From contig OZ037770.1 in assembly GCA_964035545.1 (NCBI GenBank), positions 13,878,642-13,942,641 on the forward strand: a stretch of DNA of 64,000 nucleotides, written 5' to 3'. Origin of the DNA: Bugula neritina. Lineage: Eukaryota; Animalia; Bryozoa. This document shows, in pieces, positions 17,754-39,429 of this stretch. Position 1 is the stretch's first letter. Each line of letters opens with the position of its first letter. The notes under the pieces are model-generated. The model was not told the origin of the DNA, ran no database searches, and worked only from the letters and a program-made list of their open reading frames with translations. A program made the position numbers and the translations under genes.

Positions 17754-18738
17754 TTGAAATTAACTTGTATTCGGCTCGGTAGTGTGTGGCTTATATTAGA
17801 ATTACTCACTACTGCTTACCCCGCACTTTATTATATTCTAATAGAAAACTTTTTGTAAAACTAAAAGGTAATTTATACTAACTTTCCTGTTTTGTGCATT
17901 TCTGTTCAAGGTACAGAGCATTTTGATAGCTATATATTTTCCCTGTTATTATATTTAGTTATATCTTATACTATAATTGTATTAAACACATATAATACAG
18001 TTTTCAACGTAGAAGCACATTACTTCAGAATGAATAAGTTTAGAAAATTATCTTTTCAACATTTAAAGTGCTTTTGTCTACAACTTGCAGTCTTTAAGCT
18101 GTTTTATTATCTCTGATATATAATATATTTGGTGATTGCAGTGAAATTGATAAACTTGTACATTACATGTTGAATTTTTTGAGTTCATTCTCAACTGGTA
18201 ACAATAAACATAAATATATTATTCTTATTACTCCATCGGTAATTGCTTTTATAATTCACATGTAATAAATATTACTTTATTGTTAATACAGTACTGCTTC
18301 TATAAGACTTTGGTGCATAGTATCTGTTTTTTCCAAAAAAGTATCTTTAACTGACATGTTGAGCATTTTTGAAGTTCTTTAAGTTCAATGAATTTACAAG
18401 CTTCCATATTTTATGTATAGCTGACAAACTAAAGCGTACGGACTATAGTGTTTCGTAAGCTGCAAAAGGAGCATTATTTTATGGGAAATAAAGTTAAACA
18501 ACAACAACAGTAAGCTTTTCTTAGCGCGTCCGCGCCAGACCTAAACTAGATAGTTTCACATACAAAAGAAGGAAATGTGTGTAGTTGTCTGTTCATTATT
18601 CTGTGACTAGCGGCGAGAAATCTTTTGGTATTAGTTTTTCTGCCGCAAGTTTTGTCGATTGTTAATTAGCATGCAGCCTATGGACTACAGCTTTATGCAC
18701 ATGTCGGCATAAACTGATGAAAGCTGCAAAAGTCATCA

Positions 18739-18817
18739 GGGTAATTTTCTGAACCACAGGCAATTGTTACGGAAATTCCAATTAGTCGCGTGAGGTGTTT
18801 GGAAGTGGGGATTCCCC
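18739..18817 (+). promoter_or_regulatory. Cluster of NF-kB/Rel-type sites: GGGGATTCCCC (18807-18817), GGAAATTCC (18771-18779), GGGTAATTTTC (18739-18749)
   Basis: One perfect palindromic kB site and two weaker Rel-like sites within 80 bp, in a CpG-richer patch ~0.95 kb upstream of the ATG at 19755. Confidence 0.5.
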
Positions 18818-19019
18818 CACAATCTGACGCTCCACTAGGTTTCATTTTTCCATACGCTCATAGCGATAATGGGCACCATAATGATGATAGTCAAGGGCTA
18901 TTAGTATTACTTACACAGAGCCCAATGGAGATATTACTGACTGAAAATAAAGGTTTTTTTACAATTTGATCCAAGGTCCGCTTTATAAAAGTCAAAATAA
19001 GTCTGCAATTGTAAAACTA

Positions 19020-19190
19020 ATAGTTATAATATAACTAGTACTACAAGTATAACTATAACTATTACCAGTAATACTATTACTATTACTATTAGTATTAGCA
19101 TTAGTATTACTCCTACTATTAGTATTAGCATTAGTATTAATAATATTATTAGTATTACTATTACTATTACTATTAATATTACTATAAAGT
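19020..19190. repeat. Low-complexity (TAT/TAG/TAC)n tract
   Basis: Seen directly in the sequence. Confidence 0.8.
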
Positions 19191-19754
19191 ATAAAAATAA
19201 TTACAAGTCTAAGTAATTCATACTGATACTCAGACTGATAATGATACCCATACTCAGTATGGGTATCATGATACTGTTAAACTCATATTCACGATATTGT
19301 ATTTACTGTCATCAATATCATTATCACTTAATCACCATGATTATAATTATGAGTATAATTATCAGTGTAACTCTCTGTTTTAAACATTAATATGAAAGTG
19401 AATGTCAACAAATGTAATATAAATATAGTAATACTTATAGTTAGTGTTGATGGCTTAATATTTAAGTTGATGTTATATTCACAGTTTCAGTATTGACGTA
19501 ACAACAGTTCAAATTTGTTGGTCAATAGCAATGACCATGATAAGTATTTTAGTTTAGGTTTCGTGTAATAGGTAAACAAATTGAAGTAAATGATCCTGCT
19601 CTTCTATAACTTGTAGACTCATTTTGACAACAACACCACTTATATTTTTGAAATAAAACCAATCAACATTAATGATCACATTTTTTTTATAAATAAAAAT
19701 AATTTTCTGTTCCAGAGATACATTTGCCTCATATCTACAAAAAGAGTGTGAAAA

Positions 19755-20504
19755 ATGGCAGAAGCTAGAAATATTAAAAATCAATATATTATACCACCCG
19801 ATAAATTTTCATTCACTGTCGAAGAATGGCCTCAGTGGAAAAGAAGATTTATCAGATATATGTCTGTAACATCCTTAAACCAGGAGAGCGATGCTCACCA
19901 AATAGAGATGCTGATTTATACCATGGGCGACCAGGCAGAGGATGCTCTTCTGTATTCAGGAATCAATGAAAAGGTGGCAACTTTCAATGAGACCCTTGAA
20001 GCCCTTGACCAGTATTTTCTTTTAAGATCTGAATCGCGATGTCATCGAATAAAATTTAGTGAGAGAATTCAGCAGCCTGAAGAAACTATAGATGATTATA
20101 TCAAAACGCTGTTCGAGCTTTCCAAGAAATGTGATTTCGAACACACGAGTAGCGTGGAGAATCGAGTCGCTGATCAGGTGGTCAAAGGATTGAGAGATAA
20201 AGCTCTCAGTTTGAACATGCAACTTGATTCGCTCACTCTTGCTGACATCGCAGCTAAATGTGGCAGTCAGCAAAGAATATCTTCGAGAAGTGATTTAGCT
20301 GAAAACACAGAGCAAGCTGCCGATAGTAACTGGCATCATGCGTCTGCGCTAGATCCTGTTTTTACTCATAATGTAGTGACTTTTGCAGCTGACCAACAAA
20401 CACACATTCCGAGTGATCAGAGAGGCTATGTTGAAGGTTATCTACCTACCGGATGTTACTACTCCGCCTCGGATGGTGTGGCAAGCGCTGTTGAGGTACA
20501 GTAG
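19755..20504 (+). CDS. Ty3/gypsy-type Gag (capsid-like) domain, solitary and probably domesticated; 249 aa if unspliced, or first coding exon (19755-20495) of the eIF4G-like gene
   Basis: [61 protein letters not shown] and DQVVKGLRD match the N-terminal Gag of Mag/K02A2.6-like retrotransposons. No CCHC knuckle, pol or LTRs are visible. A splice acceptor (ttttctgttccag) at 19715 precedes the ATG. Confidence 0.8.
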   Translation: MAEARNIKNQYIIPPDKFSFTVEEWPQWKRRFIRYMSVTSLNQESDAHQIEMLIYTMGDQAEDALLYSGINEKVATFNETLEALDQYFLLRSESRCHRIKFSERIQQPEETIDDYIKTLFELSKKCDFEHTSSVENRVADQVVKGLRDKALSLNMQLDSLTLADIAAKCGSQQRISSRSDLAENTEQAADSNWHHASALDPVFTHNVVTFAADQQTHIPSDQRGYVEGYLPTGCYYSASDGVASAVEVQ

Positions 20505-23500
20505 ACACAAGCTCTATGTCATGCAATTTATAATTACATTATTTATGCTGTTGAATAAATAAACATATTAATTAATTTCAGCTTCATATTTTAGGTTTTT
20601 ACTGTATTTGTTCATCTCTATAAACATGCTAATTTAAATTACTCATCTCTACTAACATAACTCTCTTACTATTGGGATTCCTCTACTTTGTTTTTAGCAA
20701 TATGACAATATAACTGGTGTTTCACAATACTCTAACCAACAGTATTTAGTCTACCCTAACAGCTATCCTATTTATTACACCCCAACTTTAACAGGGGAAC
20801 AAGCTGTAGTGACGGAACCTTCACCTCAGGTAATAATAATTCCTTACTTTCACTAACACACCCACAATATTATATTATAATATCATATAAATATAATATG
20901 TAATTCAAACCTTTACTTTGAATGAAAACTGTTTAATTATTGTAAAATAATTTTTTTGGTTTTTAAATATAATTAATCACGTAATTGATATTGCATAATT
21001 TAATTCTATATCTAGTAAGTTTTTGTAAGCTCTTAAATTATTTAGTTTGAAGTTAATTTATACTTGCTGGATCACTAATTTTCAAACACATCCCTGATTA
21101 GCTAATAGCCAGTTTTCTAGCTTATCTTTGATTCATTGATGGGTAATTTTCTTATTTCAATGCTCTGTTCTAACTATCATATTTATGAGCAGTAGTTATT
21201 GAAAAATTAATTTTAAAGATGGTAAATAATTTGTTTTCTTAATCACAATTGTTAGGTATCTCCTCAACTCACTCATCGAGAAAAGCATCCTATTGAGATA
21301 GTTGATCCTCTTACCAAAACAATTGAAGACAATTCAAAGGATAAGCTTGTTTCTAGTACAAAGTCTACTCCAGGTAAACCTTTATAATATACAGGTACTT
21401 CTACACAGATTATAATTGTGTTAGGTCAACTCCAGGATACCCTGTTATATTCAAGGTAAACCACTAACTTTTAAGCCTGCTTCTGATTGACCAGAATTAA
21501 AATTCTACCGGCAAAATGAAAGCCATATTTTTGTTTAAACTTGGTAAAAAATGCATAAGGGGTTCACTTTGAACTGCAATGGGAGTTGTGCTCTGTTGTA
21601 GCTCCTGCTGGACTATCCTATGACCGAAACTTTATTGTTAGTTTGTATCATGCACCAGCTTCTCGGGTACGACCTTCATTTTTCCAGGACTTCCCTGAAA
21701 TTCTTTTAGCTCGTCCTCGAAAAGTGCCAGAGATATTTCGTAAAGGAAAGCCAAACCCTAATTACTTTAAAGAGGTTTGCATAATAAATATATATAACCA
21801 ACAATTAGATAGCGTGTTGATAGGGATAGTAAATGATCATGCCTTACTATGTTTAAGACTAACTTGCTGGAATATTTTCTACGCTCAATAAATTATGACT
21901 CATTACGTTATAGTTATTTTCAGCACTGCACACTAAAATAACCTAATAATGTCCTTACTTGAAGAATGCATCAATCAATAACCATTTGAAAGTCTTTTTG
22001 TTTGAGTTTAATGAAGACTAAATTCAATATTAGCTTTCAGGAGACCAGTTTTAAAGATGTTATAGCTTTTCTTGGGTATCACTCAAGTTTAGACTTGAAC
22101 ATAGGGAAACAGCAACTCTTTTAAGTAGAGTTTTATTTTGAAACTGAGTCATCCATAGAAACAGACGTTCACCAAATGTTTCAAGTTAATTGCTCCGAAA
22201 GACTGCAAGTTGAATATTTTACTAACAAAATATTAACTATAGTGACTTAGTAGTGTTGAAATGCATGACTCTTGTGAGGGAATAACTCCTTATTGATATT
22301 TACATTATATGGTTACAATTTACAGTAAATAGGAGCTTTTCACAAGCCCTCTGGGGACATTTGTATTTTGAAGTTGTCTCCTCCCAGAAGGGCGAAGTGT
22401 AGTCTCCATGATATATAGAACAAGCACATAAAATCAGTAGAAATTTAAGGTTTGTGGGAAGACTATTGCTAGTACCAGTTTCATTTTTTTTGAGATTAAT
22501 ATTTTGGCATAAGCACACAGGTTAGCAGTTCCAGAAAATTTTTAAAAATTTTCTTTCTTCAAAAATCTTGAGAAAAATTAACTTCAAAGCATGTTTGTGG
22601 TTTTGGTTACTGCATGAGCAAGTTGAATTGGCAACTATGAGATAAGTCCCATTAATCATTTGTTATGCTGGCTGTCATATTTAATTTATAGCTGTTGACC
22701 TTTCAACTCTTTGGTCAGAATGTGCTGTTAACACAGTGTTAGAGCACTGCTACTCTGCTAGTGCACTGAATGAGACAGCAGATTAGCTATGTTAGCATTT
22801 TCATTACACTTATGCTATGAGAATAGCTAGACTATAACCTCAACATCCATCATTTTCACAAAAAAGCATTTTCTCAAAGCTATAGATATATATTAAATAG
22901 ACAGATTAAATTTGTAGTATAGAACGAGTATGAAATGTGCTTTGATACATGTCGGTTAATTTTCTAATACAGGTTAAATGCATCTATTGCAATTGTAACA
23001 ATTGTGCTCAAATAAATATATATCTAGATAATTTAATCAGAAACCGAGATAGCCTTTTAGCAGTTGGCATTCAGGCCCTTGGGTTACAGCTTTGTTATTT
23101 CTTAATTATGCCTGTGGCTTGTAGCATTTAGGAGCATGCAGTAGTGAAGAAATTGAGAGAGCCTAAGTTCTTTAACTTTCTTTACGAATGTTGGTGTTGC
23201 GTATAACACAACTTTTTTGCTACATTTCTAATCTAGAAAAAAGGCTTTTCTCAATTTCTCCATTAGTACTGCATCTACTTTGTGTGTAGTAGTCATCTCC
23301 GTCAACTGCGGTAGATTCAAGATCCTAGTTAATGTATGGTAGGTTAAAGTATAGTTATATAATAAAATGGATATACAATATAAAATAGGTAAACTAAGCT
23401 AATCACTACTGCACCTGAAAGCCCAAGTTTCCCAACTCATCAAATTGCAGCATAAACTGAATTCTCTGACAATTACTTTAGAAGGAAATTCTGGTTGAAA

Positions 23501-26500
23501 AGTATTAAGCAGATTCTTACAAGTGAAGCAGTGAAAGCATGTTGATAAAATTGGGTTATTAACATTTTGCTTGGGTTTTCAGTTAAACTGTTTAATGTTA
23601 TAGCTCCTCAACTTCTCATGCTTCAAATATCATGAGCTAGTGTTATTGACACTCAACTGCAGTTATGCAACTAGCTTGGCTGATCCCATGGGTCACAAAA
23701 TGTTATAAAATATAAAGCCTTTCTTAAATTTGAGACTCATATTTGAATGACATAAAATTTTAGAGTGTGGCTATAAGTCACGACAGCACCAATTAGAATA
23801 TTACAGGTATTATCTTAAAATAGGCATGCGCAGGGATATGTAAGTTAAAATCAAGTATAACATTTCAATTAAATCTTTTAAGTAAAACTATTAGACCTGT
23901 TGTAAAATATGCAATGAAGATTTAGAGCAGACAAAATATTTCAAGATGGATCGATACTGAATGAAAAGATGCCTGCCTAAATATAAAGTATTTTTAATAA
24001 ATTTTTGCATAAACTGAGCTTTGCTTTTCTTGGTAATATTTTTCTTTTAAAGAAGTTTTAGCCATAACATGAAACTATGTAAAGCATTTACGGTCCTTTG
24101 AACATAATGTAGCACAAACTCTTCAAAGTGTAATTAAGTGCACATGCTATCACGAATCATTTTGATACTACAAATTTAATCTGTCTATATTTAATATATA
24201 TCTATAGCTTTGTGAAAATGCTTTTTGTGAAAATGATGGATGTTGAGGTTATAGTCTAGCTATTATCATAGCATAAGTGTGTAAGTGTAATGAAAATGCT
24301 AACATAGCTAATCTGCTGTCTCATTCAGTGCACTAGCAGAGTAGCAGTGCTCTAACACTGTGTTAACAGCACATTCTGACCAAAGAGTTGAAAGGTCAAC
24401 AGCTATAAATTGAATATCACCGGCTTTCCATGTACCGATCTCAGATCGATCTCGCTGAGATCGATCTGAGAAATGTGCTGATCAGATCGATCGTTTTTCC
24501 ATGAGAGTGTCAGATCGATCTAGCGGAGTTGCCTCCTCTTAAGTGAAGAGTACTTTAATATTATATTTTTTAACCCACCTGGGTGATTCAAGCTAATGCT
24601 TTTGAAAAAACAAAATTTCCATAGTCTAAAATTCAGTGCCAGCTATAAACTCTACGCAGTAAAGCTTTTAGTAAGAAGCAATTTAGCCAACTTAAGATAA
24701 TTCATTTTAATATTTTAGTTTGACAGCTTATATAAAATTAATAGCTGTTATGCAGATTATTCATAAACTTACAGGACTATTGGGCTTAAAAATAAGCAGC
24801 AAATAACTAATGAAAGTAAGTTTTACTAGCCATTTAAATTCAATTTAAATGCTCCTACTTTTTCCACCTTCTACCGTCTATAATTTTATATAATTGAGTT
24901 TGTTTAATCATAGTACTGAAAGTCAAAGTTTTGGCATCTGAAAATGTGGCTATAGTAATTATTAAGTAATTTGCTTAGTAATTACCAATAAATTATCATT
25001 TTTATTAGCGGCGACATTTTAGCGAACAGTCTTTTTCTATTTCTCAGATCGAACTTTCGTCTTTCCATGACCTTATTGCCTTGAGATCGATCTGAGTTCG
25101 AGCTCTACAGACCGACCAGCTCAGAACGACTGAGATCGATCTTTAGCGTCTTTCCATGGATCGATCTCAGCGAGATCGATCTGAGATCGGTACATGGAAA
25201 GCCGGTGAATGACAGCCAGCATAACAAATGATTAATGGGACTTATCTCATAGTTGCCAATTCAGCTTGCTCATGCAGTAGCCAAAACCACAAACATGCTT
25301 TGAAGTTAATTTTTCTCAAGATTTTTTAAGAAAGAAAATTTTTAAAAATTTTCTGGAACTGCTAACCTGTGTGCTTATGCCAAAATATTAATCTCAGAAA
25401 AAATGAAACTCGTACTAGCAATAGTCTTCACACAAACCTTAAATTTCTACTGATTTTATGTGCTTGTTCTATATATCATGGAGACTACACTTCGCCCTTC
25501 TGGGAGGAGACAACTTCAAAATACGAATGTCCCCAGAGGGCTTGTGAAAAGCCTCTATAGTACAAAACACTCAACAGTGTTTTTGGACAACTTTATAAAT
25601 AAATGCAAAAATACAGAAGGACTCGAAACAAAATTAAGTAATACATTCTGTGCCAAACAGCTGTTCTATAATTGATAGAAAAGAAATTTGCTACCACTTA
25701 TGAAATCTCAAATGGTCCACTGGCTAATTAATTAATTGAATATAAAGGATTATCTATAATGCTACATAATGCTTGAGTAAAGAACAATACTTGAAAGTTT
25801 AGCTTACAATGCAAATAAAAGTATTGAGACTGCTAAATCAATAAGCGTAATGCAAACATACTTCATGAAAATAACTTTTCAACTAAACTTTACGTGAATG
25901 AAGCGAAGAAATTTTCCTTATTTGTTGCTGCAAAACACAAAATAGGAAATGGATTAATATGTGGGTAGTATAATGCTATGTTTGGCAAGTCACACTATAT
26001 TAACATTCTTCACAACAAAGAGTGCCCTCTATATTGCTGTCAGAAATGTCAGCATATTTCAGTGATAAGGCAAATCTGATTGCATGCCTGGGTAGAAGAC
26101 ACCAATTAATGAAGTCGATTTTTTCTAATTTGTGTGTTTTAATAATTTGTTTAAACTTTTTTTGCACAGTATTTGCTTCAATGTAATTGTGACTTCAGCT
26201 TGAGCAGGTTCTGTTGTAAATATAATGTTTTTATCTGCACAGATAATTCTGTCGTTTTGTATAAAAGAAAGCACCCTAAACCGCTCTACAATATGGTTTA
26301 GAGAAGGCAAGCTAATAGGTCTAAACTGCTGAATTTTTAGGCTCAGAAAACAGTTTTTTCTGCTATTTTAGCTGAACTATTTTAGTCAATCAACATTCTA
26401 GTGTTAATTTTTTAGGGTCGCTTTATGAATGTTCAAGAAACTAACACAAGAGAGCTTGGTATGTTCAGAAAATCTCTAGATGATTATGAACATTCTAAAC

Positions 26501-29113
26501 AAGCACCAACGAAGGCCAACATAGACACTACGAGTAAATACACTGCTTCTACTGACATCATCAGGTATAACTGTAGTCTGACTCTTAGGCAGCTGGTGTT
26601 GCTTTTCTTTACTGGTAATAATTCAGTCGGAATTATCCCAACAGTTTAAGTTTTGTTGTTATTTGGCTGTTAGAAGACAGAATAAAAATTCTCCTTAGTT
26701 TGCAGATTCTATTACCAAAGACATTGTTGGTATAACAGTTTTTGAGATTCTTTCAAGACAACACATTGACATGTGCAATGCAACAATGAAATCTGCTAAC
26801 ACATGCTTTAAGAAGTAAAATTGGAGTAAAATTGGCTCTTTTAAGTATTAAAGTAGTAAAAAACTTTTAAGTTAAAAGTTTTTCTATCTAAAGGATCTGT
26901 TGAAATTTAGCATGTTTCATCTTCTATATCATAAGCAATTTTAGTTGTACTGTAATTAAGTGTCAGAATTTTGTTAAAACTTGGGTGTTATATTTCTATG
27001 TCATATTATTATGAAAACAGGTGTGAGCTTACTAAAGAGTCACCTAGTGCAAGCCTGTCTCTTTATTCAGGTTAGTTTATAAGTAGACATCCTGGTATGA
27101 TAGATGTATTCCATGATGAAAAGTCATAAGTGTTTCTCTAAAATATTATATAACATATTTTTTTAGTAACATCTTCAATGCGTAAAATCACTACTGCACT
27201 TGTTACTTCTTTTTATTTGCAAAACTTTAGTCAGTTTCGCTTTGGAAAATTCTCGAAATGATTTTGCTGCATTTTTTATTTTTTGCTCTCTTTGCTGACG
27301 AACATGCAAAAAAATTCTTCTATTATTCATTATCTAGTATTGTTTTGCTTACAAATGTGCTTAAGTTGGCCTGTGGTAGCTGCATAACTAAAAAGGCATA
27401 CTTTAATTTATTGGTCACATGATTGCCTTCTGTAAAATCTTCAGTTTTGTTACTTTTAAATAGAATATGAACGATTTATTAGTATTTAGCTTACGTAATT
27501 TTAACTAATTATTTAATAAACATTCTAGTATAGTTTAATAAACAAGTTAGAAAAATAGCCATAACTTTGCGAGTTACAAAGTTTAAGATATACAATCTCC
27601 AATATGTTCAAATTTGACATAAAAAATTGAGTGAGCAAGATTCACTTTTAGTTTTTAAGTATGATCCCAGGCCAACTACATGTACTTATGAATTTGATTA
27701 AAAGCTGGGGTGAATACGACGTCTCAAATAATGTGTATCACTTATAGGGTCTCTTACAAAAGGTTCAGTTGAACTTGGTGTCAGCAAACATCCAGACACT
27801 ATTCAGTCCGATTCGTCTGACGAAGACTCAGACATTCTGTCAGAATCGTCCGACGAACACTCAGACACTATTCTGTCAGATTCGTTTAGTGAATTGCCTG
27901 GCTCCTTGGTTACGGAGAGCTTCAAATTAGGTGCAAACTCCGCAATTGATGAGCAGGAAGAGCAGCTAAACACTCCCAGCCATAAGTTTTATGTGAGTAC
28001 ATCTCTTTCTTTTTATTCAACGTATAACTAATCCTCTACTTCATCAGAACTGGGCTGTTAGCTTTACAGAATGTCTAACGCTCTTTCAACAAGATGTCAT
28101 AGTAATTAGCTTGTGCTTTAGGATTTTAATTTTTGTGAGGAGCACTGTTTTAATATCTACCTTCCAGGGTTGGGGTAAATGTGATTTTTAATTTTAATTG
28201 GTTGTAGTTAATTACATTTTTTCAAGTAATTGAATGTAATTTGTAATTGTTGTATAAAATGTAATTGTAATTGTAATTAATTACATTGCTAATGTATTTG
28301 AATTTTACGATTACTTTATAATTACATAGCAATTACTTCAAATTTTTAAATCTTATAAGATTAATATTTTTCCTGCCTTGCCTGCTGTTTAATAAAAAGT
28401 TCAGATTAATTTAATATCATATTCATCACTGTTGAGAGCAAGGAAGGTTTTCCGTTGTCAAAATTGCCCTGGGTAGTTGGACCCCAGAGGTGAGATTATA
28501 TAACTTTTATTTGTCTCCTGTGACTACAAACGTAATTGTAATTGTAATTAATTACATTACAATATAATTGTAATTGTAATTAATTACATTTATTTCAACT
28601 GTAATTGACAAAGCATCATGTAATTGTAATTGTAATTAATTACATTAATATGTAATTGACCCCAATCCTGCTACCTTGACATTGGCAGTTTTTTATATTG
28701 TAAATGTGCACAAGTAGTTTTTTCTCACCTATCTCCGCTTTGTCCTGTTCGAGTAGCGGGAAATGTGCACAATTAGTTGCTAATTGCTAATTATGGACAG
28801 CAAAAATGAATAACACGAAACAAGACCGAAGAAAATTACCAAAGTTACTATTTAGGGTTAAAACTTATATAATATATTGAGGAGTTTATTTAAATTCTAG
28901 CATGGTTGGAAATCTCGAGTAGAGAAAAATGCTGAAGACAAGAATGCATATACTGAAAAAGGGAGACTTGACAGAATTCAGGCAATGAATAGGTTCAAAC
29001 ATAGCCGGGGTTTTGTACAAACTCCTAAATTGTTCGTGGAGTCTGCTGACAAGGCATTAAACAAGGTTAACGTAAATGCTTTGATGGAGTACACAACCTC
29101 TTCTAACGTTACC

Positions 29114-29159
<46 letters not shown>

Positions 29160-29208
29160 GTATATATATATACATATATGTATATATATACAAATATATA
29201 TATATATA

Positions 29209-29303
<95 letters not shown>

Positions 29304-32300
29304 GTATATATATATATGTATATATATACATATATAGATTCATATTTGGGTTCATAGGTGGTCAATTTGGTATGTATAACATCCATAGGGGGCTCTGTGC
29401 CCATAGGGGGCTGCTCATAGGGGGCACCATGTTTGAGTGTTTTAAATTACTCAGAACAGTCTGTTATGGTATATAGACACTATTTTAAAAATAGGCTCAC
29501 AGAAGGACAATTTGATATTTTCCAATATCAGAGGGGGCTCTGTATATATATACAAAAAGCCCCCTATGGTATTATACAATATCAAATTAGGGAGTTGTCT
29601 CCCCAAAAACTAATGTAAAGGTTTTTCACTGTTGGAAACACTTAATTACATTGATAATAATATCATTTCAGTTGCTATAATTGTGCCAGGGCTTAAGGTA
29701 GAACTTGTATAGAAATCTGGTCTGCATCTCCGTTAAAAAAATATATTTGAGTTGTTGTGAGCTTATATATAGTATATCTGCCCCCTATGAGCCTATATAT
29801 TCTATATCTGCCCCCTATGAACCTATATATTCTATATCTGCCCCCTATGAACTTATATATATTATATCTGCCCCCTATGAGCCTATATATTCTATATCTG
29901 CCCCCTATGAGCCTATATATTCTATATCTGCCCCCTATGAACTTGTATATATTTTATGTGCCATCTTTGAGCTCATATATACTATATATGTGCCGCTATG
30001 AGCCTAGATATGTTATATGTGCCCCTTATGAGCTCATATATGCTGCATGTATGCGATCCCCATAAGCCTGTGTATACTATATCTGCCCCCTATGAGCCTA
30101 TATATTCTATATCTGCCCCTATGAGCCTATATATTCCATATCTGCCCCCTATGAACTTATATATATTATATCTGCCCCCTATGAGCCTATATATTTTATA
30201 TCTGCCCCTATGAGCTTATATATATTATATCTGCCCCCTATGAACTTATATATATAATATCTGCCCCCTTTGAGCTTATATATTCTATATCTGCCCCCTA
30301 TGAACTTATATATATAATATCTGCCCCCTATGAGCTTATATATTCTATATATGCCCCCTATGAGCCTATATATTCTATATCTGCCCCCTATGAATTTATA
30401 TATATAATATCTGCCCCCTATGAGCCTATATATTATATATTTGCCCCCTATGAGCTTATATATTCTATATCTGCCCCCTATGAACTTATATATTCTATAT
30501 CTGCCCCCTATGAGCTTATATATTCTATATCTGCCCCCCATGAACTTATATATATAATATCTGCCCCCTATGAGCTTATATATTCTATATATGCCCCCTA
30601 TGAGCCTATATATTCTATATCTGCCCCCTATGAATTTATATATATAATATCTGCCCCCTATGAGCCTATATATTATATATTTGCCCCCTATGAGCTTATA
30701 TATTCTATATCTGCCCCCTATGAACTTATATATTCTATATCTGCCCCCTATGAGCCTATATATTTATTATCTGCCCCCTATGAGCTTATATTATATTATA
30801 TATCTGCCCCTATGAGCTTATATTATATTCTATATCTGCCCCCTATGAATTTATATATTCTATATCTGCCCCCTATGAGCTTATATATATTATATCTGCC
30901 CCCTATGAGCCTATATATTCTATATCTGCCCCCTATGAGCTTATATATATTATATCTGCCCCCTATGAGCTTATATATATAATATCTGCCCCCTTTGAGC
31001 TTATATATTCTATATCTGCCCCCTATGAACTTATATATATAATATCTGCCCCCTATGAGCTTATATATTCTATATATGCCCCCTATGAGCCTATATATTC
31101 TATATCTGCCCCCTATGAATTTATATATTTAATATCTGCCCCCTATGAGCCTATATATTCTATATCTGCCCCCTATGAGCTTATATATTCTATATCTGCC
31201 CCCTATGAATTTATATATATAATATCTGCCCCCTATGAGCCTATATATTCTATATATGCCCCCTATGAGCCTATATATTCTATATATGCCCCCTATGAGC
31301 TTATATTATATTCTATATCTGCCCCCTATGAGCCTATATATTATATATCTGCCCCTATGAGCTTATATTATATTCTATATCTGCCCCCTATAAACTTGTA
31401 TATATTTTATTTGCCATCTTTGAGCTCATATATACTATATATGTGCCGCTATGAGCCTAGATATGTTATATGTGCCCCTTATGAACTTATATATTCTATA
31501 TCTGCCCCCTATGAGCCTATATATTCTATATCTGCCCCCTATGAGCTTATATATATTATATCTGCCCCCTATGAGCCTATATATTCTATATCTGCCCCCT
31601 ATGAGCTTATATATATTATATCTGCCCCCTATGAACTTATATATATAATATCTGCCCCCTTTGAGCTTATATATTCTATATCTGCCCCCTATGAACTTAT
31701 ATATATAATATCTGCCCCCTATGAGCTTATATATTCTATATATGCCCCCTATGAGCCTATATATTCTATATCTGCCCCCTATGAACTTATATATTCTATA
31801 TCTGCCTCCTATGAGCCGATATATTTATTATCTGCCCCCTATGAGCTTATATTATGTTATATATCTGCCCCTATGAGCTTATATTATATTCTATATCTGC
31901 CCCCTATGAATTTATATATTCTATATCTGCCCCCTATGAGCTTATATATTCTATATCTGCCCCCTATGAGCTTATATATTCTATATCTGCCCCCTATGAG
32001 CCTATATATTCTATATCTGCCCCCTATGAGCTTATATATATTATATCTGCCCCCTATGAGCCTATATATTCTATATCTGCCCCCTATGAGCTTATATATA
32101 TTATATCTGCCCCCTATGAACTTATATATATAATATCTGCCCCCTTTGAGCTTATATATTCTATATCTGCCCCCTATGAACTTATATATATAATATCTGC
32201 CCCCTATGAGCTTATATATTCTATATATGCCCCCTATGAGCCTATATATTCTATATCTGCCCCCTATGAATTTATATATATAATATCTGCCCCCTATGAG

Positions 32301-35300
32301 CCTATATATTCTATATCTGCCCCCTATGAGCTTATATATTCTATATCTGCCCCCTATGAACTTATATATATAATATCTGCCCCCTATGAGCCTATATATT
32401 CTATATATGCCCCCTATGAGCCTATATATTCTATATATGCCCCCTGTGCGCTTATATTATATTCTATATCTGCCCCCTATGAGCCTATATATTATATATC
32501 TGCCCCCTATGAGCTTATATATATTATATCTGCCCCCTATGAGCCTATATATTCTATATCTGCCCCCTATGAGCTTATATATATTATATCTGCCCCCTAT
32601 GAACTTATATATATAATATCTGCCCCCTTTGAGCTTATATATTCTATATCTGCCCCCTATGAACTTATATATATAATATCTGCCCCCTATGAGCTTATAT
32701 ATTCTATATATGCCCCCTATGAGCCTATATATTCTATATCTGCCCCCTATGAATTTATATATATAATATCTGCCCCCTATGAGCCTATATATTCTATATC
32801 TGCCCCCTATGAGCTTATATATTCTATATCTGCCCCCTATGAACTTATATATATAATATCTGCCCCCTATGAGCCTATATATTCTATATATGCCCCCTAT
32901 GAGCCTATATATTCTATATATGCCCCCTGTGCGCCTATATTATATTCTATATCTGCCCCCTATGAGCCTATATATTATATATCTGCCCCTATGAGCTTAT
33001 ATTATATTCTATATCTGCCCCCTATGAACTTGTATATATTTTATGTGCCATCTTTGAGCTCATATATACTAGATATGTGCCGCTATGAGCCTAGATATGT
33101 TATATGTGCCCCTTATGAGCTCATATATGCTGCATGTATGCGATCCCCATAAGCCTGTGTATAATATATCTGCCCCATATGAGTTGATGTATACTATGTG
33201 TGCCCTATATCAGCAAGCACAGTCCACATCGTCTGATTGTATAGTAGGTTTATTAATTCGCATATTTTTAATTTGATGTCTTTCTCTGCAATTATGACTT
33301 TCAGCTTTAGAATTTTATTTGTTATATGCAGCACGTTTTCAAATTAAAAAAATTATCAACCTAAGAAGATACATACCTTTTGCTGTCTCCAATTTGCTGC
33401 TCAAATTTTTATTTTTGCTTCTGGTAGAAACAGGCATTTTTTCTAACAATTTAGTTATAGTGTTTAAAAGTACTAAATGGTTTCCCAGCAGCCTTTACTT
33501 AGCTGAAATGTAACTTTCCAGTGTCAGAATGGCAGCTTTGACAAATTTCTTGTATACATATACTGCTAGTAACAGAGAAAATGATCTGTTCCTGCAATCA
33601 CTTCTACTAAGGTCTATAGAGGGAGACCACATCCCTACAATTATGTAAAAGATAATAGACCCCCTGTAGTTTTGGGCCTAGTTTCTTTGCATCTTCATAA
33701 TAATTTTAATCAGGAAACTTAAGTAAGCTTAGAAGTTTTTAATTTACTAAAAATGGCTGCTAAGAGGGGTACCTTAGTTTGAACTTTATACAGAAATCCT
33801 ATAATTAGCCTATTTGGCTGCAACTTCAAAAGCACTCTCATATTTATAAATTCTTTTGAAGGAGTTTACCCTCAAATACTGTTGTACAATAAAGAAAAAA
33901 TTTCAAGCTAGCTGTTCTACTTTTCTTGGTTTTGTGTTATCTCAGAACACGCAGAGTTTATAGTCTTTATGAGAGACCTTTTTCAACTGACTGAGAGCAT
34001 AATAGCTGAGATCTTGTCTGCTGTCACTACAACACGGACTTTTATAATAGGAAATATTAAGAAATGCTTGCAGCTTACCTTTGCTATTAAATATTAGACC
34101 CTGTAGAATATAAGATAGGCCCTACACCAAATTTCATTCACAATAAATCTAATGGGAATCAGTAGAGATGATGAATTCAAAGTTATTAACACATATTATT
34201 GAAAACTATTTATACAAGTCTTACTCTTTTTGTTGGTAGTCAAATTATATGACTAGCAAGAAGTTTAGATTTTGTTATTCACCCATTGCGTGAACAATAC
34301 TTTTTCTAGCTGCATTATTTTACTTGAAAAATTTTCAAAACAGGGAAACCAATTCAGCAACTAGTTTTAAAGTTTGAAAAAGGCATGTAGCACCAGTGTT
34401 ACACTGGTCATCGGTCTCTATAACAGTAACAATTCAGTTTAATTCCAAATAGACAACCCCCTCCATATAGACGCCAAACAATATATTCTACTTAGACTGC
34501 CTACTGAACAGCTATATTTAAAAGCGTTAGAAAATGAAAATTGTACTTTTTATAAATAATATGTATTTTGCTGGAAATATTTTGTTGCATGCAATTAATA
34601 GAAGCTGGGGGAAACCCTGAGTATGTCTCATGTAAACACAGTTGGAGCAAATACACCAGCTAACTGTAGAATGGCTAAATATTTGCAGCCGTAATACCTA
34701 TAAACAATTCAACTAAAAAGTAGACATGGATGTGAACATTGTAGCTATTTGGTAATTAGTATAATAGCTTAACAGCGGATTTGCTCTTATCCTTACTAAG
34801 TGACAGGCAAAGTAAGAATTTACAAAATAAATTCTTTTAACAATACATTAGGCCAAGAACTACAGCAAATTGAAATTAATGATGGGTGTCTTTAGATTGC
34901 CTAACTTTTTTGGAGCTACTTACATTTTTCTTTCTTATATTGAAGAAAAAACAGCCATTTAGTTTAGACTTAGCAAAGGCTAGCAACTGTAAGACATGTA
35001 GTATTAGTCAAGTAGCTAACCTGTTACACAGGAAACTTAATAAATAAAATGTTCTGCCTCAGCAAAAGAAGTTTAAGCTTTTTACAATCGTGGCTCATTA
35101 AACGCTTGAATATTTTTATGTATAAACACCTAAAGTAAGTTTGTGATTTGAAATTAATGGCAAAAGGTTGAACACAAATTATTTACTATTGCCTTTCTTG
35201 GCCTGGGCCCAACCAGGCTAAGCAACTTAATTGACTACTAAAATTTTATGGAGAACTCGAATAGCTGACGTGTAAAACCATGTAAAAGTCAGCCGATCAG

Positions 35301-38300
35301 CAATGTGTACCAGGTCAACACCCCATTATTATAGCTTATATAAAATTCTGCAAGTTCAGTTGCAAACTGCATGCTTCTAGAAAGCAGTTGTGCAACTTTT
35401 TTTAAGTGCATTACTTCATTTCATATCTTAAATTTATGACACTCTGATGTATTTTCAAACATCTAAAGCAAGTGTGTATAAAATGCAATTAAAAATTGTA
35501 TGTCTACAAAAATGACCTGGTACACTTTTGCAGCTGAAGGCCAGTTGTTACATAACTCTTAGCTTTATTTGTTCTCTATTATACTAGTGTGAACTCTTGT
35601 TCTCCAATATGCCAGATTTTGGTACAGAACTCTGATTAGCTGGGTTTTTGAATGGTTTTCTAATACATACATCTGATTGCCTGAATAGTGCACACTGCAT
35701 CTACCTTTACATGGTGCAAGCTACAGGGTAGTATTATACCATCTTTCTGTTTACCAATTTTTTGTTCACAATAGTGAATAGGCTATTCAGCAAAGATTTT
35801 ATGGCATGTAAGCCATGGGAACTTTTACATGGTCTAAGTAATTTTAGAGGTAATGGCTTTCATTATAGAGCTAATAACAGGCTCCAACCTTATAGAGATA
35901 CACAAAGGGCTACATAAGGACAACAACAACTACAATAAGTATAACATAGGACATGAAGTTTGAAGCAATTTTGCTGGCAATTCCCCAAAGAATTAATATT
36001 ATACCTAACTAATGTAAACTTTGAACACATTTTTTCAACTTGCTGAAACTCCATACCAGCAAGAAATCTTTTTAACGAAGATAAATTGCATTTTGTAAAA
36101 CTGTTTGATGTTGTCGTGCAGCTCTGGCTAAATAAGGAAACATAGAGCAAGCCATTTATTTTGTAAAACTAATCATAAAGTACAGAATAAATCATGAAAA
36201 GTTGTATAATTTTGTATTTTAGTTTCACTTGAAGCTTTCCTGCAGCGTAGCAGTGTTTGTTCTATCCATTCAGTCAGTTACTTAATTGTTTATTAGTTTG
36301 TAGGCTGTTCTATTTACTCTAGGCCCTAGGCTTTAAGAATGAAGAACTAGCACTATCTAGCACCATCTAGCACTTGTAACCTATTGATAGTCCAGGGTGC
36401 TTTACTTGCCATACTCTGGCTTGCAGACAGAGGATTCAAATTGCTTTTTATGACTAGATACCTGTTATATTTTGCTCTTACAAGATAAATCAATTTTTAA
36501 ATATTCTCAAAGTAAAAACATGTTTAAAGGTAGCACCATACGTTGTTGTTCAGTTTGTATCTCTACCCCAATATTCTGCATTATATTTGTCTTCTATCAA
36601 TTTGTGAAAAGAGCTACTGAAAGAGCTTTTTATGAAACTTAAAACAAATTGAAACATTTACCCAATACTCAACTTACTGGATTGCTCTCTATCATGGTAG
36701 GCTATCAACAAAGCAAGCCAAAATTGCTTATTCTGAAATTTAGCTTTTGTGAAAATTGGCAAGCTTTAGTTAATAACCTGTAATTATATAGCCAAGTTGT
36801 TTAATTAAGATTTAAAGTAGCATTGTGTTACACACAATAGTTTCAGAAAATAATTGAAAGAAAAATTTAATAATATATTACTATAAAGTACCAGGAAAGT
36901 CTTGCTGATGTTTATAAAGCATGCATTAAACATTCTGTATTTCAATGGAAGATAACTTACACATTGTAGAAGGAAAGTTGTCCACTTGTCTTAGTTTACA
37001 AGGCTATGTCGTAATGCTAGTAGTAGACTGATACCCAAACAACAAAAAATAGGGAAAAATCTGGTGCTTGTCATAAATATTATGTTAATTTGTCTCTCTA
37101 GCATTAGGACAAAAAGAGAGATAAACCAGTTGCATATATAGTGCGATTGTGCATAAACTGCTATCCTAGCTTACAAATTGTTGAGTGCCAATATTTGAAT
37201 TGTCAATATATTTATGCCAGGTAAGGCCAGTAAGAAAATGTAGTTTACCAGTACAAGATTAAATAAAAAGTACGTAAAAGCAGTAACAGAGACAAGTTCT
37301 GAAACGTCTGCTCATGCAAACAAAATGCCCAATTGCTAAGAGTTGGGAGCAGTTTTGAAGAAGCTTGTATATTATACCACTAATTGTTAACATTAAATCT
37401 ATAAAAGTTACTGTTAAAGATTGAAAAAAAATCAAGGCACATTCAGAAGCTTGCTAATATATTTCTTTTGAAGCTATTGCAATTAAAGAGTAATTTGTAG
37501 TGTAACTGCTGCATTTCTAGCCCACAAAAAGTTTCAATAGCTTATAAAAGGCTAGACAACAGGGTTTTCAAATTTTGTTTTAGTACACATAGCTTCAGGT
37601 TTTTTTAAGAAGCGCTATTTTATATATTAGCAACTGTGAAAGATATAGTTAGGGGTTGCTCTTATTTGTGCTCCGTAAAGCATTTAAAAAAAGAACTCAG
37701 ATATGGGTTTGAGAAGAAAGGGCATATAATTAGTAGCCTTACATTCAGCTTTAACTCAATATATTTTACTGAAGCGTTGAGTTAATCTCTATAGACTTTA
37801 GAGCATATGAAAGTGTACTAACCGACTGTTTTGTGTGCACTATAGCAAAGAATCACAGTTCAAAGTACATTTTCAGATATAAATGATTGTGAAAAATATA
37901 TTTTAATTGGTTTAATCCTATCATATATTACAAGTCTCTTTGTTATGTAAATTCAAATAGAATACTATAATTATTTTGAAATAAATATTAAAAAATTATC
38001 AGCCTATTGTGCATTAGTACTTCAAATAATATTAGCAATGACAAAAATATTAATAGGAGATTTTTTTCTCATATGATGCATCATGAAGATGAAGTGCAGA
38101 AAATGTGCTAATATTCTTAAGATTAGTTTAAAGCAATGGTGTTCTGCGTGTTCTTTAATGATTGATTACAAACAGTGCCCTCAAATTGCCATCTATATAA
38201 CTGTTCAAAGAATCACTGAGGCAGACTTTTAAGAAATCTGCAAAATACTGTACCTATACGGTTGATTTAATGAAAGGAATAGCTAGTAAAACTTCAAAAA

Positions 38301-39362
38301 TAAGCCTTTGAAGCAAATCGTTTAGCATCTGGTAAATAGAAGTGCATACCTGGCCGTTTTTTTTAGTAATACCTATATAGTGGTGCTATCCATCCAATTG
38401 TTTTTTATTAAAAGACTTTAGATCATATAGCTAGTTTAGAAATTAGTTTTATCTTGCTTTGCTCGAATTATATAAGTAGGTATATGCATAGTAGCTAAAT
38501 GAACTTAACACACATATTTTTTAATACAGGAAAATACTATAGATATTAGATATTACAGTATAAACTGGCTGCAATCAAATTGAGTAATTTTTAAAATAAA
38601 ATATACATTATATGTTTCATTCATTCTTTAAGTATACAATATAGGCTTATAATAATTTGAGGCAACTTTTAATTAATTAATTATATCTGTATTTTGTCAA
38701 CTAACTGCTATTCTATTTTTGCTATTACAATATTTTACTTCACTTGCTTATTGAATGACGTGCAATTTCTTTTTCAAAGTACTTGTTTTTATAGTTTAAA
38801 ATTATATAAACTTGGTTCAATTTAATTGAACTTTTCCTGTTATATAAAAAAAAATATATATACAACTTTCATTACCTGAACAAAATATAAGAATAAGCAA
38901 AACATCAACATACAGGGTGCACTTTGAATTATTAGACATAAAAATCCTTATTCAATTTTAAAAAGGAAATACATAACATAGGAAATTGAAGTGTAATTTT
39001 TTTATTTAGAATGCATGGCTCTATCAGTTCCTTACAGAGATTAATGGCATAGTGTGAATAGAAGTTGAAAAATAATTGTTTTTCAACTGAAATTGTTGGA
39101 GAATTAATTATAGCAGACAAAGTAGAACAAAACCAATTGAGTTTCTATACTTTGCATAGTACAAATGTAATATAGCTATTATTACTCAAAAAGTAAAAAT
39201 GAGAAGACAATTTCAAAGTAAAAAAAATATGATATATTCTGATAACAGAGGGGGCTCTGTTTATAGGCCCCTATGGTATCGAAATATACCAAATGCATAT
39301 AAGCCCCCTATGAGCAGCCCTCTATGAAACCACATTTAAGAATATATATATATATATATATA

Positions 39363-39429
<67 letters not shown>

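What the first reader, a model, noticed from the sequence alone, without database searches (positions are those of the whole stretch)
19755..21774. Retrotransposon Gag domain apparently spliced in frame onto eIF4G-like exons
Seen: the Gag-like ORF has no pol, zinc knuckle or LTR. A donor (GAG|gtacag, 20495/20496) three codons before its end is phase-matched to an open exon at 20698-20829 (Q/Y/P-rich). This continues to 21256-21373 ([11 protein letters not shown]) and 21602-21774 (YDRNFIVSL). Known: these resemble the eIF4G PABP-binding (RERKTIRIRDP) and eIF4E-binding (YDREFLL) motifs; domesticated Gags (Arc, PEG10, PNMA, Fv1) form capsids or restrict retroelements. Inference: a capsid-like domain fused to cap-complex and poly(A)-complex binding motifs might package host mRNPs, or co-assemble with retroelement Gag and interfere with its translation. 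I know no described Gag-eIF4G fusion.
Basis: partly seen in the sequence, partly recalled or inferred. Interest (0 to 1): 0.85.

Follow-up and report, generated by a model that had tools for sequence, protein, structure and literature searches.

The report
Solo capsid gene beside broken eIF4G copy
A bryozoan (Bugula-type) genome keeps a lone retrotransposon capsid (Gag) gene intact under selection, directly upstream of and in phase with the first exons of an eIF4G copy that lacks its core domain; a true Gag-eIF4G fusion protein is possible but unshown, and comparison with related copies leans against it.

Summary
The sequence features are present as described. ORF 19755-20504 encodes a Ty3/gypsy-type Gag capsid with no pol, zinc knuckle or LTR. 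GAG|GTACAG at 20495/20496 is phase-0 compatible with open exons at 20698-20829, 21256-21373 and 21602-21774. None of these exons has an ATG.

The window is bryozoan, 84-93 % identical to Bugula neritina contigs. Two related copies keep the Gag ORF intact. In all three comparisons the capsid part is under purifying selection (pN/pS 0.20-0.30, p 8e-5 to 6e-3).

The same two copies have lost "exon 2": one has a nonsense codon and GT>AT at the donor, the other has the donor deleted. The proposed Gag donor is atypical and varies at position -1. All three copies keep the TAG stop and an AATAAA 50 nt downstream of it.

The downstream eIF4G-like gene has MA3 and W2 exons (39.6-43.0 kb) but no MIF4G anywhere in the window. 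B. neritina eIF4G copies do carry MIF4G exons just upstream of the homologous exon. Exon 4 (phase 0) cannot join that exon's conserved acceptor (phase 2).

Best reading: a young, stand-alone domesticated gag gene next to a rearranged eIF4G paralogue. A fusion isoform remains possible at about 0.25. No RNA data were available.

The parts
19716..19754 (+). Putative 5'UTR part of the Gag exon. A candidate acceptor (pyrimidine tract + AG at 19714-19715) lies 40 nt before the ATG. An in-frame TGA sits at 19749-19751. The start context AAAATGG is strong.
   Evidence: Read. The acceptor is kept in L001 and L005 with a C>T change inside the pyrimidine tract. That it acts as an acceptor is inferred.
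19755..20279 (+). Gag capsid (CA) domain, residues 1-175, Ty3/gypsy type.
   Evidence: Pfam PNMA E=4.3e-6. phmmer hits to Gag-Pol polyproteins down to 3.9e-57. AF2 pLDDT 85-94. Foldseek hits: HIV CA, dArc1, Copia, MOAP1, Arc, PNMA2, retroviral Gag. pN/pS 0.20-0.30 with p 8e-5 to 6e-3.
20280..20504 (+). Disordered Y/S/G-rich tail of the ORF (residues 176-249) and the TAG stop at 20502-20504.
   Evidence: pLDDT below 50 from about residue 190. pN/pS 0.54-0.73, not significantly below 1. The only indels against relatives are in frame, 6 and 24 nt. The GT and the TAG are kept in all three copies; position -1 is G, G or T.
20554..20563 (+). Two overlapping AATAAA polyadenylation-signal matches 50 nt after the stop, followed by a T/GT-rich stretch.
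   Evidence: Conserved in L001 and L005. Function is inferred, and AATAAA is common in 33 % GC DNA.
20650..20697 (+). 3' splice site of 'exon 2': TACTAAC branch-point match at 20650-20656, a pyrimidine tract, and AG at 20696-20697.
   Evidence: AG and tract are kept in L001 and L005, where the branch-point match reads TACTAAT.
20698..20829 (+). 'Exon 2': 44 codons, Q/Y/P-rich, phase 0-0, no ATG, donor CAG|GTAATA.
   Evidence: In L005, codon 14 is CAA>TAA and the donor is GT>AT. In L001, a 2-nt insertion plus a deletion removes the donor.
21256..21373 (+). 'Exon 3': 39 codons + 1 nt, carrying a PAM1-like IEIVDP stretch.
   Evidence: No significant database support. Not covered by any related contig.
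21602..21774 (+). 'Exon 4': eIF4E-binding-like region. YDRNFIV is followed by a stretch resembling the non-canonical 4E-binding segment. It ends in phase 0 at the weak donor GAG|GTTTGC.
   Evidence: Pfam eIF_4EBP E=0.021. Residues 12-47 are 36 % identical to L006:3219-3326, at the 5' end of a MIF4G-bearing B. neritina gene. No PDB hit.
21775..39637 (.). 17.9 kb without recognisable eIF4G exons. It holds a foldback element (22329-25558), (TA)n arrays and a 3.4-kb 30-nt satellite (29758-33128).
   Evidence: No MIF4G match in 106 + strand ORFs of at least 30 aa or by motif scan on both strands. Repeats. Positive control for MIF4G detection from exon-sized ORFs.
39638..39884 (+). eIF4G exon E_a, the post-MIF4G linker (GWSTVP...NRFS). 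Its acceptor is phase 2. The donor is TCT|GTAAGT; an alternative donor lies at 39970.
   Evidence: 88 % aa identity to B. neritina gene B. The acceptor phase is the same in gene B. Homology to both Bugula genes starts only at about 39655.
40821..41061 (+). eIF4G exon E_b: linker and start of MA3.
41287..41664 (+). eIF4G exon E_c: MA3 (HEAT-2) domain.
   Evidence: Pfam MA3 E=1.2e-10. PDB 1UG3 eIF4GI C-terminal portion, E=5.5e-12. A 77-aa protein named 'Eif4g [Bugula neritina]' is 90 % identical to part of it.
41768..43011 (+). eIF4G exons E_d 41768-41866, E_e 42071-42287, E_f 42471-42608 and E_g 42869-43011 (W2 domain, stop TAG at 43009-43011). Splice phases are consistent: 0, 0, 1, 1.
   Evidence: Sequence. 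Pfam W2 E=2.1e-7, 31.3 bits against a cut-off of 30. 91 % nt identity to gene A of the B. neritina contig. No stops or frameshifts.

Best explanation
The 249-codon ORF is a young, lineage-restricted, domesticated Ty3/gypsy gag gene of bugulid bryozoans. It is a solo capsid protein (two-lobed CA plus a disordered tail) with a strong start context and a probable 5'UTR intron. It has its own TAG stop and a poly(A) signal about 50 nt downstream, and selection keeps it intact.

It lies immediately upstream of the N-terminal exons of a rearranged eIF4G paralogue. That paralogue keeps PAM1-like and 4E-binding-like exons, then 18 kb of repeats, then intact linker, MA3 and W2 exons. It has lost the MIF4G core. 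It belongs to a cluster of partial eIF4G duplicates in Bugula.

Shown: Gag identity and fold, lack of pol and LTR, low copy number, purifying selection on CA, absence of MIF4G, and loss of exon 2 in the related copies.

Inferred: that the main product ends at the TAG; that it works as an Arc/PNMA-like self-assembling or Gag-binding protein; and that the in-phase arrangement with the eIF4G exons is at most used by a minor or lineage-specific isoform.
For: - Gag identity and fold.
- Solo state.
- Only two close relatives in the databases, P0001 and P0151. Both come from a JGI sample whose contigs carry the B. neritina mitogenome accession, and both are collinear with the window in their flanks. 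The copies therefore arose by descent or segmental duplication, not by transposition.
- All three ORFs are intact with only in-frame indels. CA pN/pS is 0.20-0.30, p 8e-5 to 6e-3, including the pair L001-L005 in which exon 2 is broken.
- The stop codon and AATAAA are conserved.
- The candidate donor is atypical and variable at -1, and phase-0 GTs are frequent by chance.
- No protein carrying this Gag joined to anything else exists among 1.8 billion cluster representatives.
- MIF4G is absent from the window, while exon-sized MIF4G ORFs of the B. neritina gene are readily detected.
- The window matches both B. neritina eIF4G genes only from exon E_a onward.
- Exon 4 (phase 0) does not fit the conserved E_a acceptor (phase 2).
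Against: - Exons 2-4 are open, have no ATG, and begin at good acceptors; exon 2 has a TACTAAC branch point and a strong pyrimidine tract. Some upstream exon with a start codon and a phase-0 donor is or was needed, and the Gag exon is the only conserved candidate nearby.
- The GT of the candidate donor is kept in all three copies, and the indels in the tail are in frame right up to it.
- Exon 2 is symmetric (phase 0-0), so skipping it would still allow Gag to join exon 3 in the relatives. Their contigs end before exon 3, so this could not be checked.
- The C-terminal eIF4G exons are intact at about 9 % divergence. This argues that they are still expressed from some upstream start.
- No RNA evidence either way.
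- It is unknown whether the three Gag copies are orthologues from cryptic species or paralogues.
Confidence: 0.5

Rival explanations
1. One reading: the Gag exon is spliced at GAG|GTACAG in frame to exon 2 (or, skipping it, to exon 3). This would give a Gag-CA protein carrying PAM1-like and eIF4E-binding-like motifs. It would end shortly after exon 4, or continue through the weak acceptor at 39581/39582 into the linker-MA3-W2 exons without a MIF4G domain. Such a protein could tether a capsid-forming module to eIF4E and PABP, acting like a 4E-BP or a packaging adaptor.
For: - The phases fit, and exons 2-4 lack a start codon.
- Exon 2 has a strong acceptor and branch point.
- The donor GT is conserved and the tail indels are in frame.
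- The tail composition (Y/S/G/Q-rich) resembles exon 2.
- A phase-0 acceptor exists at 39581/39582, where the E_a open frame begins.
- The C-terminal exons are intact.
Against: - The donor is weak (C at +4, A at +5) and reads GAT|GT in L005.
- 4 of 9 nearby GTs are phase 0 by chance.
- Exon 2 carries a nonsense codon and GT>AT in L005, and its donor is deleted in L001, while Gag stays under selection.
- The stop and AATAAA are conserved.
- No fused protein was found in the protein libraries.
- The motif similarities are not statistically supported.
Confidence: 0.25
2. Nothing here is functional as a unit. The Gag ORF is a recently immobilised retrotransposon remnant, and the eIF4G exons are decaying pieces of segmental duplicates. 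Open frames and phase matches are then residual or coincidental.
For: - The eIF4G cluster is clearly in flux. B. neritina gene B is 5'-truncated, has a frameshift in its MA3 exon and stops after E_c.
- The window copy lacks MIF4G.
- Exon 2 is broken in the relatives.
- The tail of the ORF is not significantly constrained.
Against: - Three Gag copies about 10 % apart in flanking DNA all keep intact ORFs, with significant purifying selection on CA.
- About 490 codons of C-terminal eIF4G exons in the window have no stop or frameshift, whereas the introns are full of indels.
Confidence: 0.1
3. The missing MIF4G is an assembly fault at the satellite or microsatellite arrays. On this view the locus is really the canonical full eIF4G gene of this species, with the Gag ORF either as its first coding exon or sitting in its 5' region.
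For: - The interval holds a 3.4-kb 30-nt satellite and long (TA)n arrays.
- The B. neritina draft contig and the window differ structurally.
- The E_a acceptor and all C-terminal exons are intact.
Against: - The window has no Ns.
- Homology to both B. neritina genes stops within about 20 nt of the E_a acceptor, some 150 nt from the nearest microsatellite.
- None of the 4.6 kb of gene B between its exon-4-like piece and E_a is found anywhere in the 64 kb.
Confidence: 0.12

Closest known systems
Arc / dArc1 (domesticated Ty3/gypsy Gag)
   Same: A solo Gag capsid domain of Ty3/gypsy origin without pol or LTR, kept under purifying selection. The predicted two-lobed CA fold matches dArc1 and Arc CTD structures. 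A profile of the family weakly hits dArc1 by sequence (E=0.18).
   Different: An independent, much younger domestication, seen so far only in Bugula (next-best relatives are about 39 % identical TE polyproteins). No evidence of capsid formation, RNA binding or expression. It carries a 70-residue disordered tail instead of Arc's N-terminal coiled coil.
PNMA family / MOAP1 / PEG10-RTL (vertebrate Gag-derived genes)
   Same: Pfam PNMA is the only family above its cut-off. Foldseek hits include the MOAP1 CA-like domain and the PNMA2 capsid. It lacks the zinc knuckle, as many PNMAs do.
   Different: Not orthologous: PNMA/PEG10 are vertebrate or mammalian. Its closest relatives are invertebrate-type Gag-Pol polyproteins.
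SCAN-domain zinc-finger genes and other host-TE fusion genes made by splicing (e.g. SETMAR, PGBD3-CSB)
   Same: This is the mechanism behind these known fusions (statement from general knowledge).
   Different: No junction transcript is known here. The partner would be a translation-factor fragment rather than a DNA-binding or repair protein. The junction features are not conserved in the related copies.
eIF4G1/eIF4G3 (and the N-terminally shorter DAP5/eIF4G2)
   Same: MA3 and W2 domains and the GW.TVP...NRFS linker are present. The best PDB match is human eIF4GI. A YxxxxLΦ-like YDRNFIV exon lies upstream, and a B. neritina protein named Eif4g is 90 % identical to part of the MA3 exon.
   Different: There is no MIF4G/HEAT-1 domain in the window. 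The N- and C-terminal exon groups are 18 kb apart and out of phase at the homologous acceptor. B. neritina carries tandem copies with MIF4G.
4E-BPs and other YxxxxLΦ-bearing eIF4E partners
   Same: A product ending after exon 4 would be a protein with a 4E-binding-type motif and no eIF4A/eIF3-binding core. In principle that is a competitor of eIF4G. Pfam eIF_4EBP matches weakly across the motif.
   Different: The score is below the family cut-off. The motif has I where L is canonical. No binding data exist.

Membership tests
Retrotransposon (Ty3/gypsy) Gag capsid | Significant sequence similarity to Gag of LTR retrotransposons | tested here: met
   PNMA 26.7 bits against a cut-off of 25. phmmer E down to 3.9e-57 to polyproteins with the order Gag-PR-RT-RNaseH-IN.
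Retrotransposon (Ty3/gypsy) Gag capsid | All-alpha two-lobed CA fold | tested here: met
   The AF2 model built from a 72-sequence alignment has pLDDT 85-94 over residues 11-170. The top 50 PDB matches are all retroviral or retrotransposon capsids or their domesticated kin (Arc, dArc1, MOAP1, PNMA2), with probability 0.69-1.00 (0.97-1.00 for the best few) but modest E-values of 0.03-0.14. The best BFVD hit is a retroviral Gag at E=6e-4.
Retrotransposon (Ty3/gypsy) Gag capsid | Nucleocapsid CCHC zinc knuckle | tested here: not met
   There is no CX2CX4HX4C in the 249 residues. Related TE polyproteins do have it. It is often lost in domesticated Gags.
Domesticated gag gene (Arc/PNMA kind) | No pol, no LTRs, fixed genomic position shared between lineages | tested here: met
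   No pol domains. No LTR-like repeats. L001 is collinear with 17539-21233, including the 3' end of the upstream ROCO gene, and L005 with 19147-21133.
Domesticated gag gene (Arc/PNMA kind) | Purifying selection after immobilisation | tested here: met
   CA pN/pS 0.20, 0.30 and 0.23, with p=8e-5, 6e-3 and 4e-4. Caveat: only three sequences, and orthology versus paralogy is unresolved.
Domesticated gag gene (Arc/PNMA kind) | Expression and capsid assembly or another cellular role | not testable with these tools
   No transcript or protein data could be reached.
eIF4G | MIF4G (HEAT-1) domain binding eIF4A/eIF3/RNA | tested here: not met
   No PF02854 match in 106 + 149 + strand ORFs or in 93 - strand ORFs. 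No FIGEL/LNKLT-type motifs on either strand. Positive control on B. neritina exon-sized ORFs: E=1.2e-13 and 8.8e-4.
eIF4G | MA3 (HEAT-2) and W2 (HEAT-3) domains | tested here: met
   MA3 E=1.2e-10 and W2 31.3 bits against a cut-off of 30. PDB 1UG3 E=5.5e-12.
eIF4G | eIF4E-binding motif YxxxxLΦ | tested here: inconclusive
   YDRNFIV is present (frame from 21604). Pfam eIF_4EBP gives 15.2 bits against a cut-off of 24. No PDB hit.
eIF4G | N-terminal PABP-binding motif (PAM1) | tested here: inconclusive
   IEIVDP resembles the motif only from memory. phmmer against the PDB chain library gave no eIF4G hit.
Host-TE fusion gene made by splicing | In-frame splice junction between the TE ORF and host exons, supported by transcripts | not testable with these tools
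Phase compatibility is confirmed. No RNA data.
Host-TE fusion gene made by splicing | Junction (donor, next exon) conserved in relatives | tested here: not met
   The GT is kept, but -1 varies (G/G/T). Exon 2 has a stop and GT>AT in L005, and its donor is deleted in L001. Exon 3 is not covered by the related contigs.

The most novel reading that the evidence does not exclude
In this bugulid lineage a Ty3/gypsy capsid domain has become the first coding exon of a MIF4G-less eIF4G paralogue. The chimeric protein would be capsid + PABP-binding-like + eIF4E-binding-like motifs, with or without the MA3-W2 tail. It could bind cap and poly(A) complexes without being able to recruit eIF4A/eIF3, so it would act as a self-assembling translational repressor or an mRNP-packaging adaptor.
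Probability: 0.15. Interest if true: 0.8.

Novelty: new member of a known kind. Interest (0 to 1): 0.45.

Why it matters
Domesticated Gag genes such as Arc, PNMA and PEG10 are known mainly from vertebrates and flies. A young, selected, solo capsid gene in Bryozoa adds an independent case in a phylum with almost no functional genomics.

Its position, in phase with start-less eIF4G exons inside a cluster of partial eIF4G duplicates, makes it a concrete and cheaply testable candidate for exon capture between a capsid gene and a translation-factor fragment. A few junction reads would settle the matter.

If the fusion is real, it would be a new kind of Gag-host chimera. If not, the locus is an ordinary domesticated gag gene next to a decaying gene duplicate.

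Tried and rejected
- Search for transcript-derived or annotated proteins joining Gag to anything. phmmer against 1.8 billion representatives and the word-indexed search found only two stand-alone relatives. The exact 249-aa product is not in the collection.
- The exon-4 ORF searched alone found nothing.
- The metagenome scan with the Gag protein gave only distant (25-29 %) loci L002-L004, which were not used further.
- The single-sequence AlphaFold run was useless (pLDDT 35) and was replaced by the alignment-based run.
- PDB sequence searches with exon 3, exon 4 and E_a gave nothing.
- I tried to reach the 5' part of B. neritina gene A on VXIV02002966.1. The extension gained only 2.6 kb, and the gene still runs off the locus. 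Whether a Gag precedes the complete eIF4G gene is therefore unknown.
- One row of the alignment ('geneA_try') used wrong coordinates and was ignored.
- My first E_g frame was wrong, and that row was discarded.
- The idea that 18162-18374 marks positional orthology with the flank of gene B was dropped. It is a 213-nt, 83 % match, probably to a dispersed repeat.
- The PAM1-like ORF at 48.2 kb was considered as a remnant of a second N-terminal exon set. The similarity is at chance level (E about 0.6).
- The joined spliced model (Gag + exons 2-4, or beyond) was never built, searched or folded. All exons were handled separately by reference.


Full report
**What is in the sequence**

The window is AT-rich eukaryotic DNA (about 33 % GC). 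ORF 19755-20504 on the + strand encodes 249 residues.
- Its ATG follows an in-frame TGA and sits in a strong AAAATGG context.
- A pyrimidine tract plus AG at 19714-19715 lies 40 nt upstream and looks like the acceptor of a 5'UTR intron.
GAG|GTACAG at 20495/20496 is phase 0. Exon 2 (20698-20829) is 44 open codons, exon 3 (21256-21373) is 39 codons + 1 nt, and exon 4 (21602-21774) completes that codon and ends in phase 0.
- None of exons 2-4 holds an ATG. The open frames of exons 2 and 3 begin exactly at their acceptors.
- Exon 2 has a textbook 3' splice site: TACTAAC at 20650-20656 and a strong pyrimidine tract.

**The Gag part**

- Pfam gives PNMA at E=4.3e-6, above its cut-off, and a weak Retrotrans_gag match.
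- A full phmmer scan of 1.8 billion representatives gave 3227 hits. Residues 12-175 align at 30-41 % identity to long polyproteins. These carry protease, RT, RNase H and integrase in the Ty3/gypsy order.
- A single-sequence AlphaFold run failed. With a 72-sequence alignment (A3) the model has pLDDT 85-94 over residues 11-170 and a disordered tail from about residue 190.
- Foldseek against the PDB returns only capsids: HIV-1 CA, dArc1, Copia, MOAP1, Arc, PNMA2 and MLV. Probabilities are 0.97-1.0 for the best matches and E-values 0.03-0.1. Against BFVD the best hits are retroviral Gag proteins, E=6e-4.
- There is no CCHC knuckle and no pol-type domain in any ORF on either strand nearby. No LTR-like direct repeats occur within 15-27 kb.

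The observation 'solo Gag capsid' stands.

**Organism and relatives**

Only two close relatives exist in the protein collections: P0001 (243 aa) and P0151 (251 aa).
- Both lie on short contigs of JGI sample 3300002729. Its contig names carry AY690838, the Bugula neritina mitochondrial genome accession.
- A 77-aa protein named 'Eif4g [Bugula neritina]' is 90 % identical to part of the window's MA3 exon.
- The window is therefore from a bugulid bryozoan, at 84-93 % nucleotide identity to the available B. neritina sequence. It is not human.
- L001 is collinear with window 17539-21233, from the 3' end of the upstream ROCO gene to intron 2. L005 is collinear with 19147-21133.
- The copies share flanks, so they arose by descent or segmental duplication and not by transposition. 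Whether they are orthologues from cryptic species or paralogues cannot be told.

**Selection**

All three ORFs are intact, and the only indels are in frame (6 and 24 nt, both in the tail).
- For the CA part, pN/pS is 0.20, 0.30 and 0.23, with binomial p of 8e-5, 6e-3 and 4e-4.
- The tail gives 0.54-0.73, not significantly below 1.
- Flanking non-coding divergence is 5-13 %.

This is the signature of a domesticated gag gene.

**Evidence bearing on the splice**

For the splice:
- The phase fits and downstream exons lack a start codon.
- Exon 2 has a good acceptor.
- The GT is kept in all copies.

Against the splice:
- GTACAG has C at +4 and A at +5. The eight other well-placed donors of this gene are GTAAGT (three times), GTGAGC, GTTAGT, GTATGT, GTAATA and GTAAAC.
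- Position -1 is T in L005.
- Four of the nine GTs in the last 120 nt are phase 0, so a phase match is expected by chance.
- The TAG stop and two overlapping AATAAA signals 50 nt after it are kept in all three copies.
- In L005, exon 2 has CAA>TAA at codon 14 and GT>AT at its donor. In L001, a 2-nt insertion plus a deletion removes the donor. CA is nevertheless under selection between exactly these two copies. What is being preserved is therefore the Gag ORF itself, not Gag plus exon 2.
- Because exon 2 is symmetric, a Gag>exon 3 splice remains possible in those copies. Their contigs end before exon 3.
- No fused protein exists in the libraries, and the exon-4 ORF found no relatives.

No RNA data were reachable, so the splice itself is untested.

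**The 'eIF4G' part**

True eIF4G exons lie at 39.6-43.0 kb:
- the post-MIF4G linker;
- MA3 (Pfam 1.2e-10; PDB 1UG3 5.5e-12);
- W2 (31.3 bits against a cut-off of 30), followed by the stop at 43009-43011.
- Splice phases are consistent and there are no disruptions.

MIF4G, the defining core of eIF4G, is absent:
- There is no PF02854 match in 106 + strand ORFs of at least 30 aa between exon 4 and E_a, in 149 + strand ORFs elsewhere, or in 93 - strand ORFs.
- No MIF4G signature motifs occur on either strand.
- The method works: exon-sized MIF4G ORFs from the B. neritina contig score 1.2e-13 and 8.8e-4.

The B. neritina contig VXIV02002966.1 (loci L006 and L007) carries two tandem eIF4G genes:
- Gene A has a 1061-aa model with MIF4G, MA3 and W2.
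- Gene B has MIF4G exons, a frameshifted MA3 exon and no W2.
- Genes A and B align with each other upstream of E_a. The window aligns with both only from about 39655, just inside E_a.
- The E_a acceptor is phase 2 in both the window and gene B, whereas exon 4 ends in phase 0. The two exon groups can join in frame only through a weak acceptor at 39581/39582.

The interval between the exon groups holds a foldback element, (TA)n arrays and a 3.4-kb satellite. Exon 4 is 36 % identical to the 5' end of gene B (E=1e-4 against a single locus). Apart from a sub-threshold eIF_4EBP match, this is the only computed support for its eIF4G origin. The PAM1 and 4E-motif resemblances otherwise rest on recall.

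The window thus holds a rearranged, MIF4G-less eIF4G paralogue within a dynamic duplicate cluster, or less likely an assembly fault.

**Verdict**

- Best explanation (0.5): a stand-alone, recently domesticated Ty3/gypsy gag gene that lies next to, and by position in phase with, the orphaned N-terminal exons of a rearranged eIF4G duplicate.
The comparative evidence leans against it as the conserved product.
- Pure decay (0.1) is contradicted by the selection on CA and by the intact C-terminal exons.
- An assembly fault for the MIF4G gap (0.12) is not exclusive of the others.

As required, the joined spliced model was not built, searched or folded; every exon was analysed on its own by reference.

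Noticed in passing
window 1842-6738 and 13104-17771 (+): There are two tandem paralogues of an LRR-Roc-COR (ROCO) gene. Each has a long single exon of about 660-690 codons. Their 3' regions are duplicated at 88-94 % (4543-6738 against 15740-17771). Four + strand ORFs outside the eIF4G region also hit the caspase domain Peptidase_C14, which suggests ROCO-caspase architectures.
   Followed up: partly
window 29758-33128: A satellite of about 111 copies of a 30-nt unit shows strong strand asymmetry (GC skew -0.43 at 30-32 kb). It gives long spurious ORFs on both strands.
   Followed up: partly
window 22329-25558: A foldback-like element has nested inverted repeats (arms of 350, 139, 59 and 50 nt, 97-100 % complementary). 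It lies in the interval after exon 4 and is probably a young non-autonomous transposon.
   Followed up: no
window 42255-42465; L006:767-1387: The end of exon E_e together with its donor is tandemly repeated (43/76-nt unit, about 5 copies) inside the following intron. This creates a row of duplicate donor sites. The B. neritina contig has more copies.
   Followed up: no
L006/L007 (NCBI VXIV02002966.1, 6030-28836): B. neritina has two tandem eIF4G genes. The second starts with an exon-4-like piece that lacks the YxxxxLΦ motif, has a frameshift in its MA3 exon and lacks the W2 exons. It is annotated as separate 270-aa and 77-aa proteins.
   Followed up: partly
window 48204-48377 (+): An open frame here has a second IxIVDP-type stretch (KIVDPETN) followed by a Y-rich piece. 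It lies in the 4.9 kb between the eIF4G 3' end and the FMO genes. Its similarity to exons 3 and 2 is at chance level (E about 0.6-0.8).
   Followed up: partly
window 49772-56432 and 57953-63434 (-): There are two tandem flavin-containing monooxygenase (FMO-like) genes on the minus strand. The B. neritina contig has the same downstream neighbour.
   Followed up: no
window 44814-46590 and 54259-56179: A dispersed repeat occurs in two copies. Near-identical short ORFs appear at 44814-45280 and 54307-54765, and again at 46034-46590 and 55534-56179.
   Followed up: no
window 19011-19212: An imperfect 9/12/30-nt tandem array (TATTAC/TATTAG-rich) lies about 550 nt upstream of the Gag start. In L005 this region aligns at only 78 %.
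   Followed up: no
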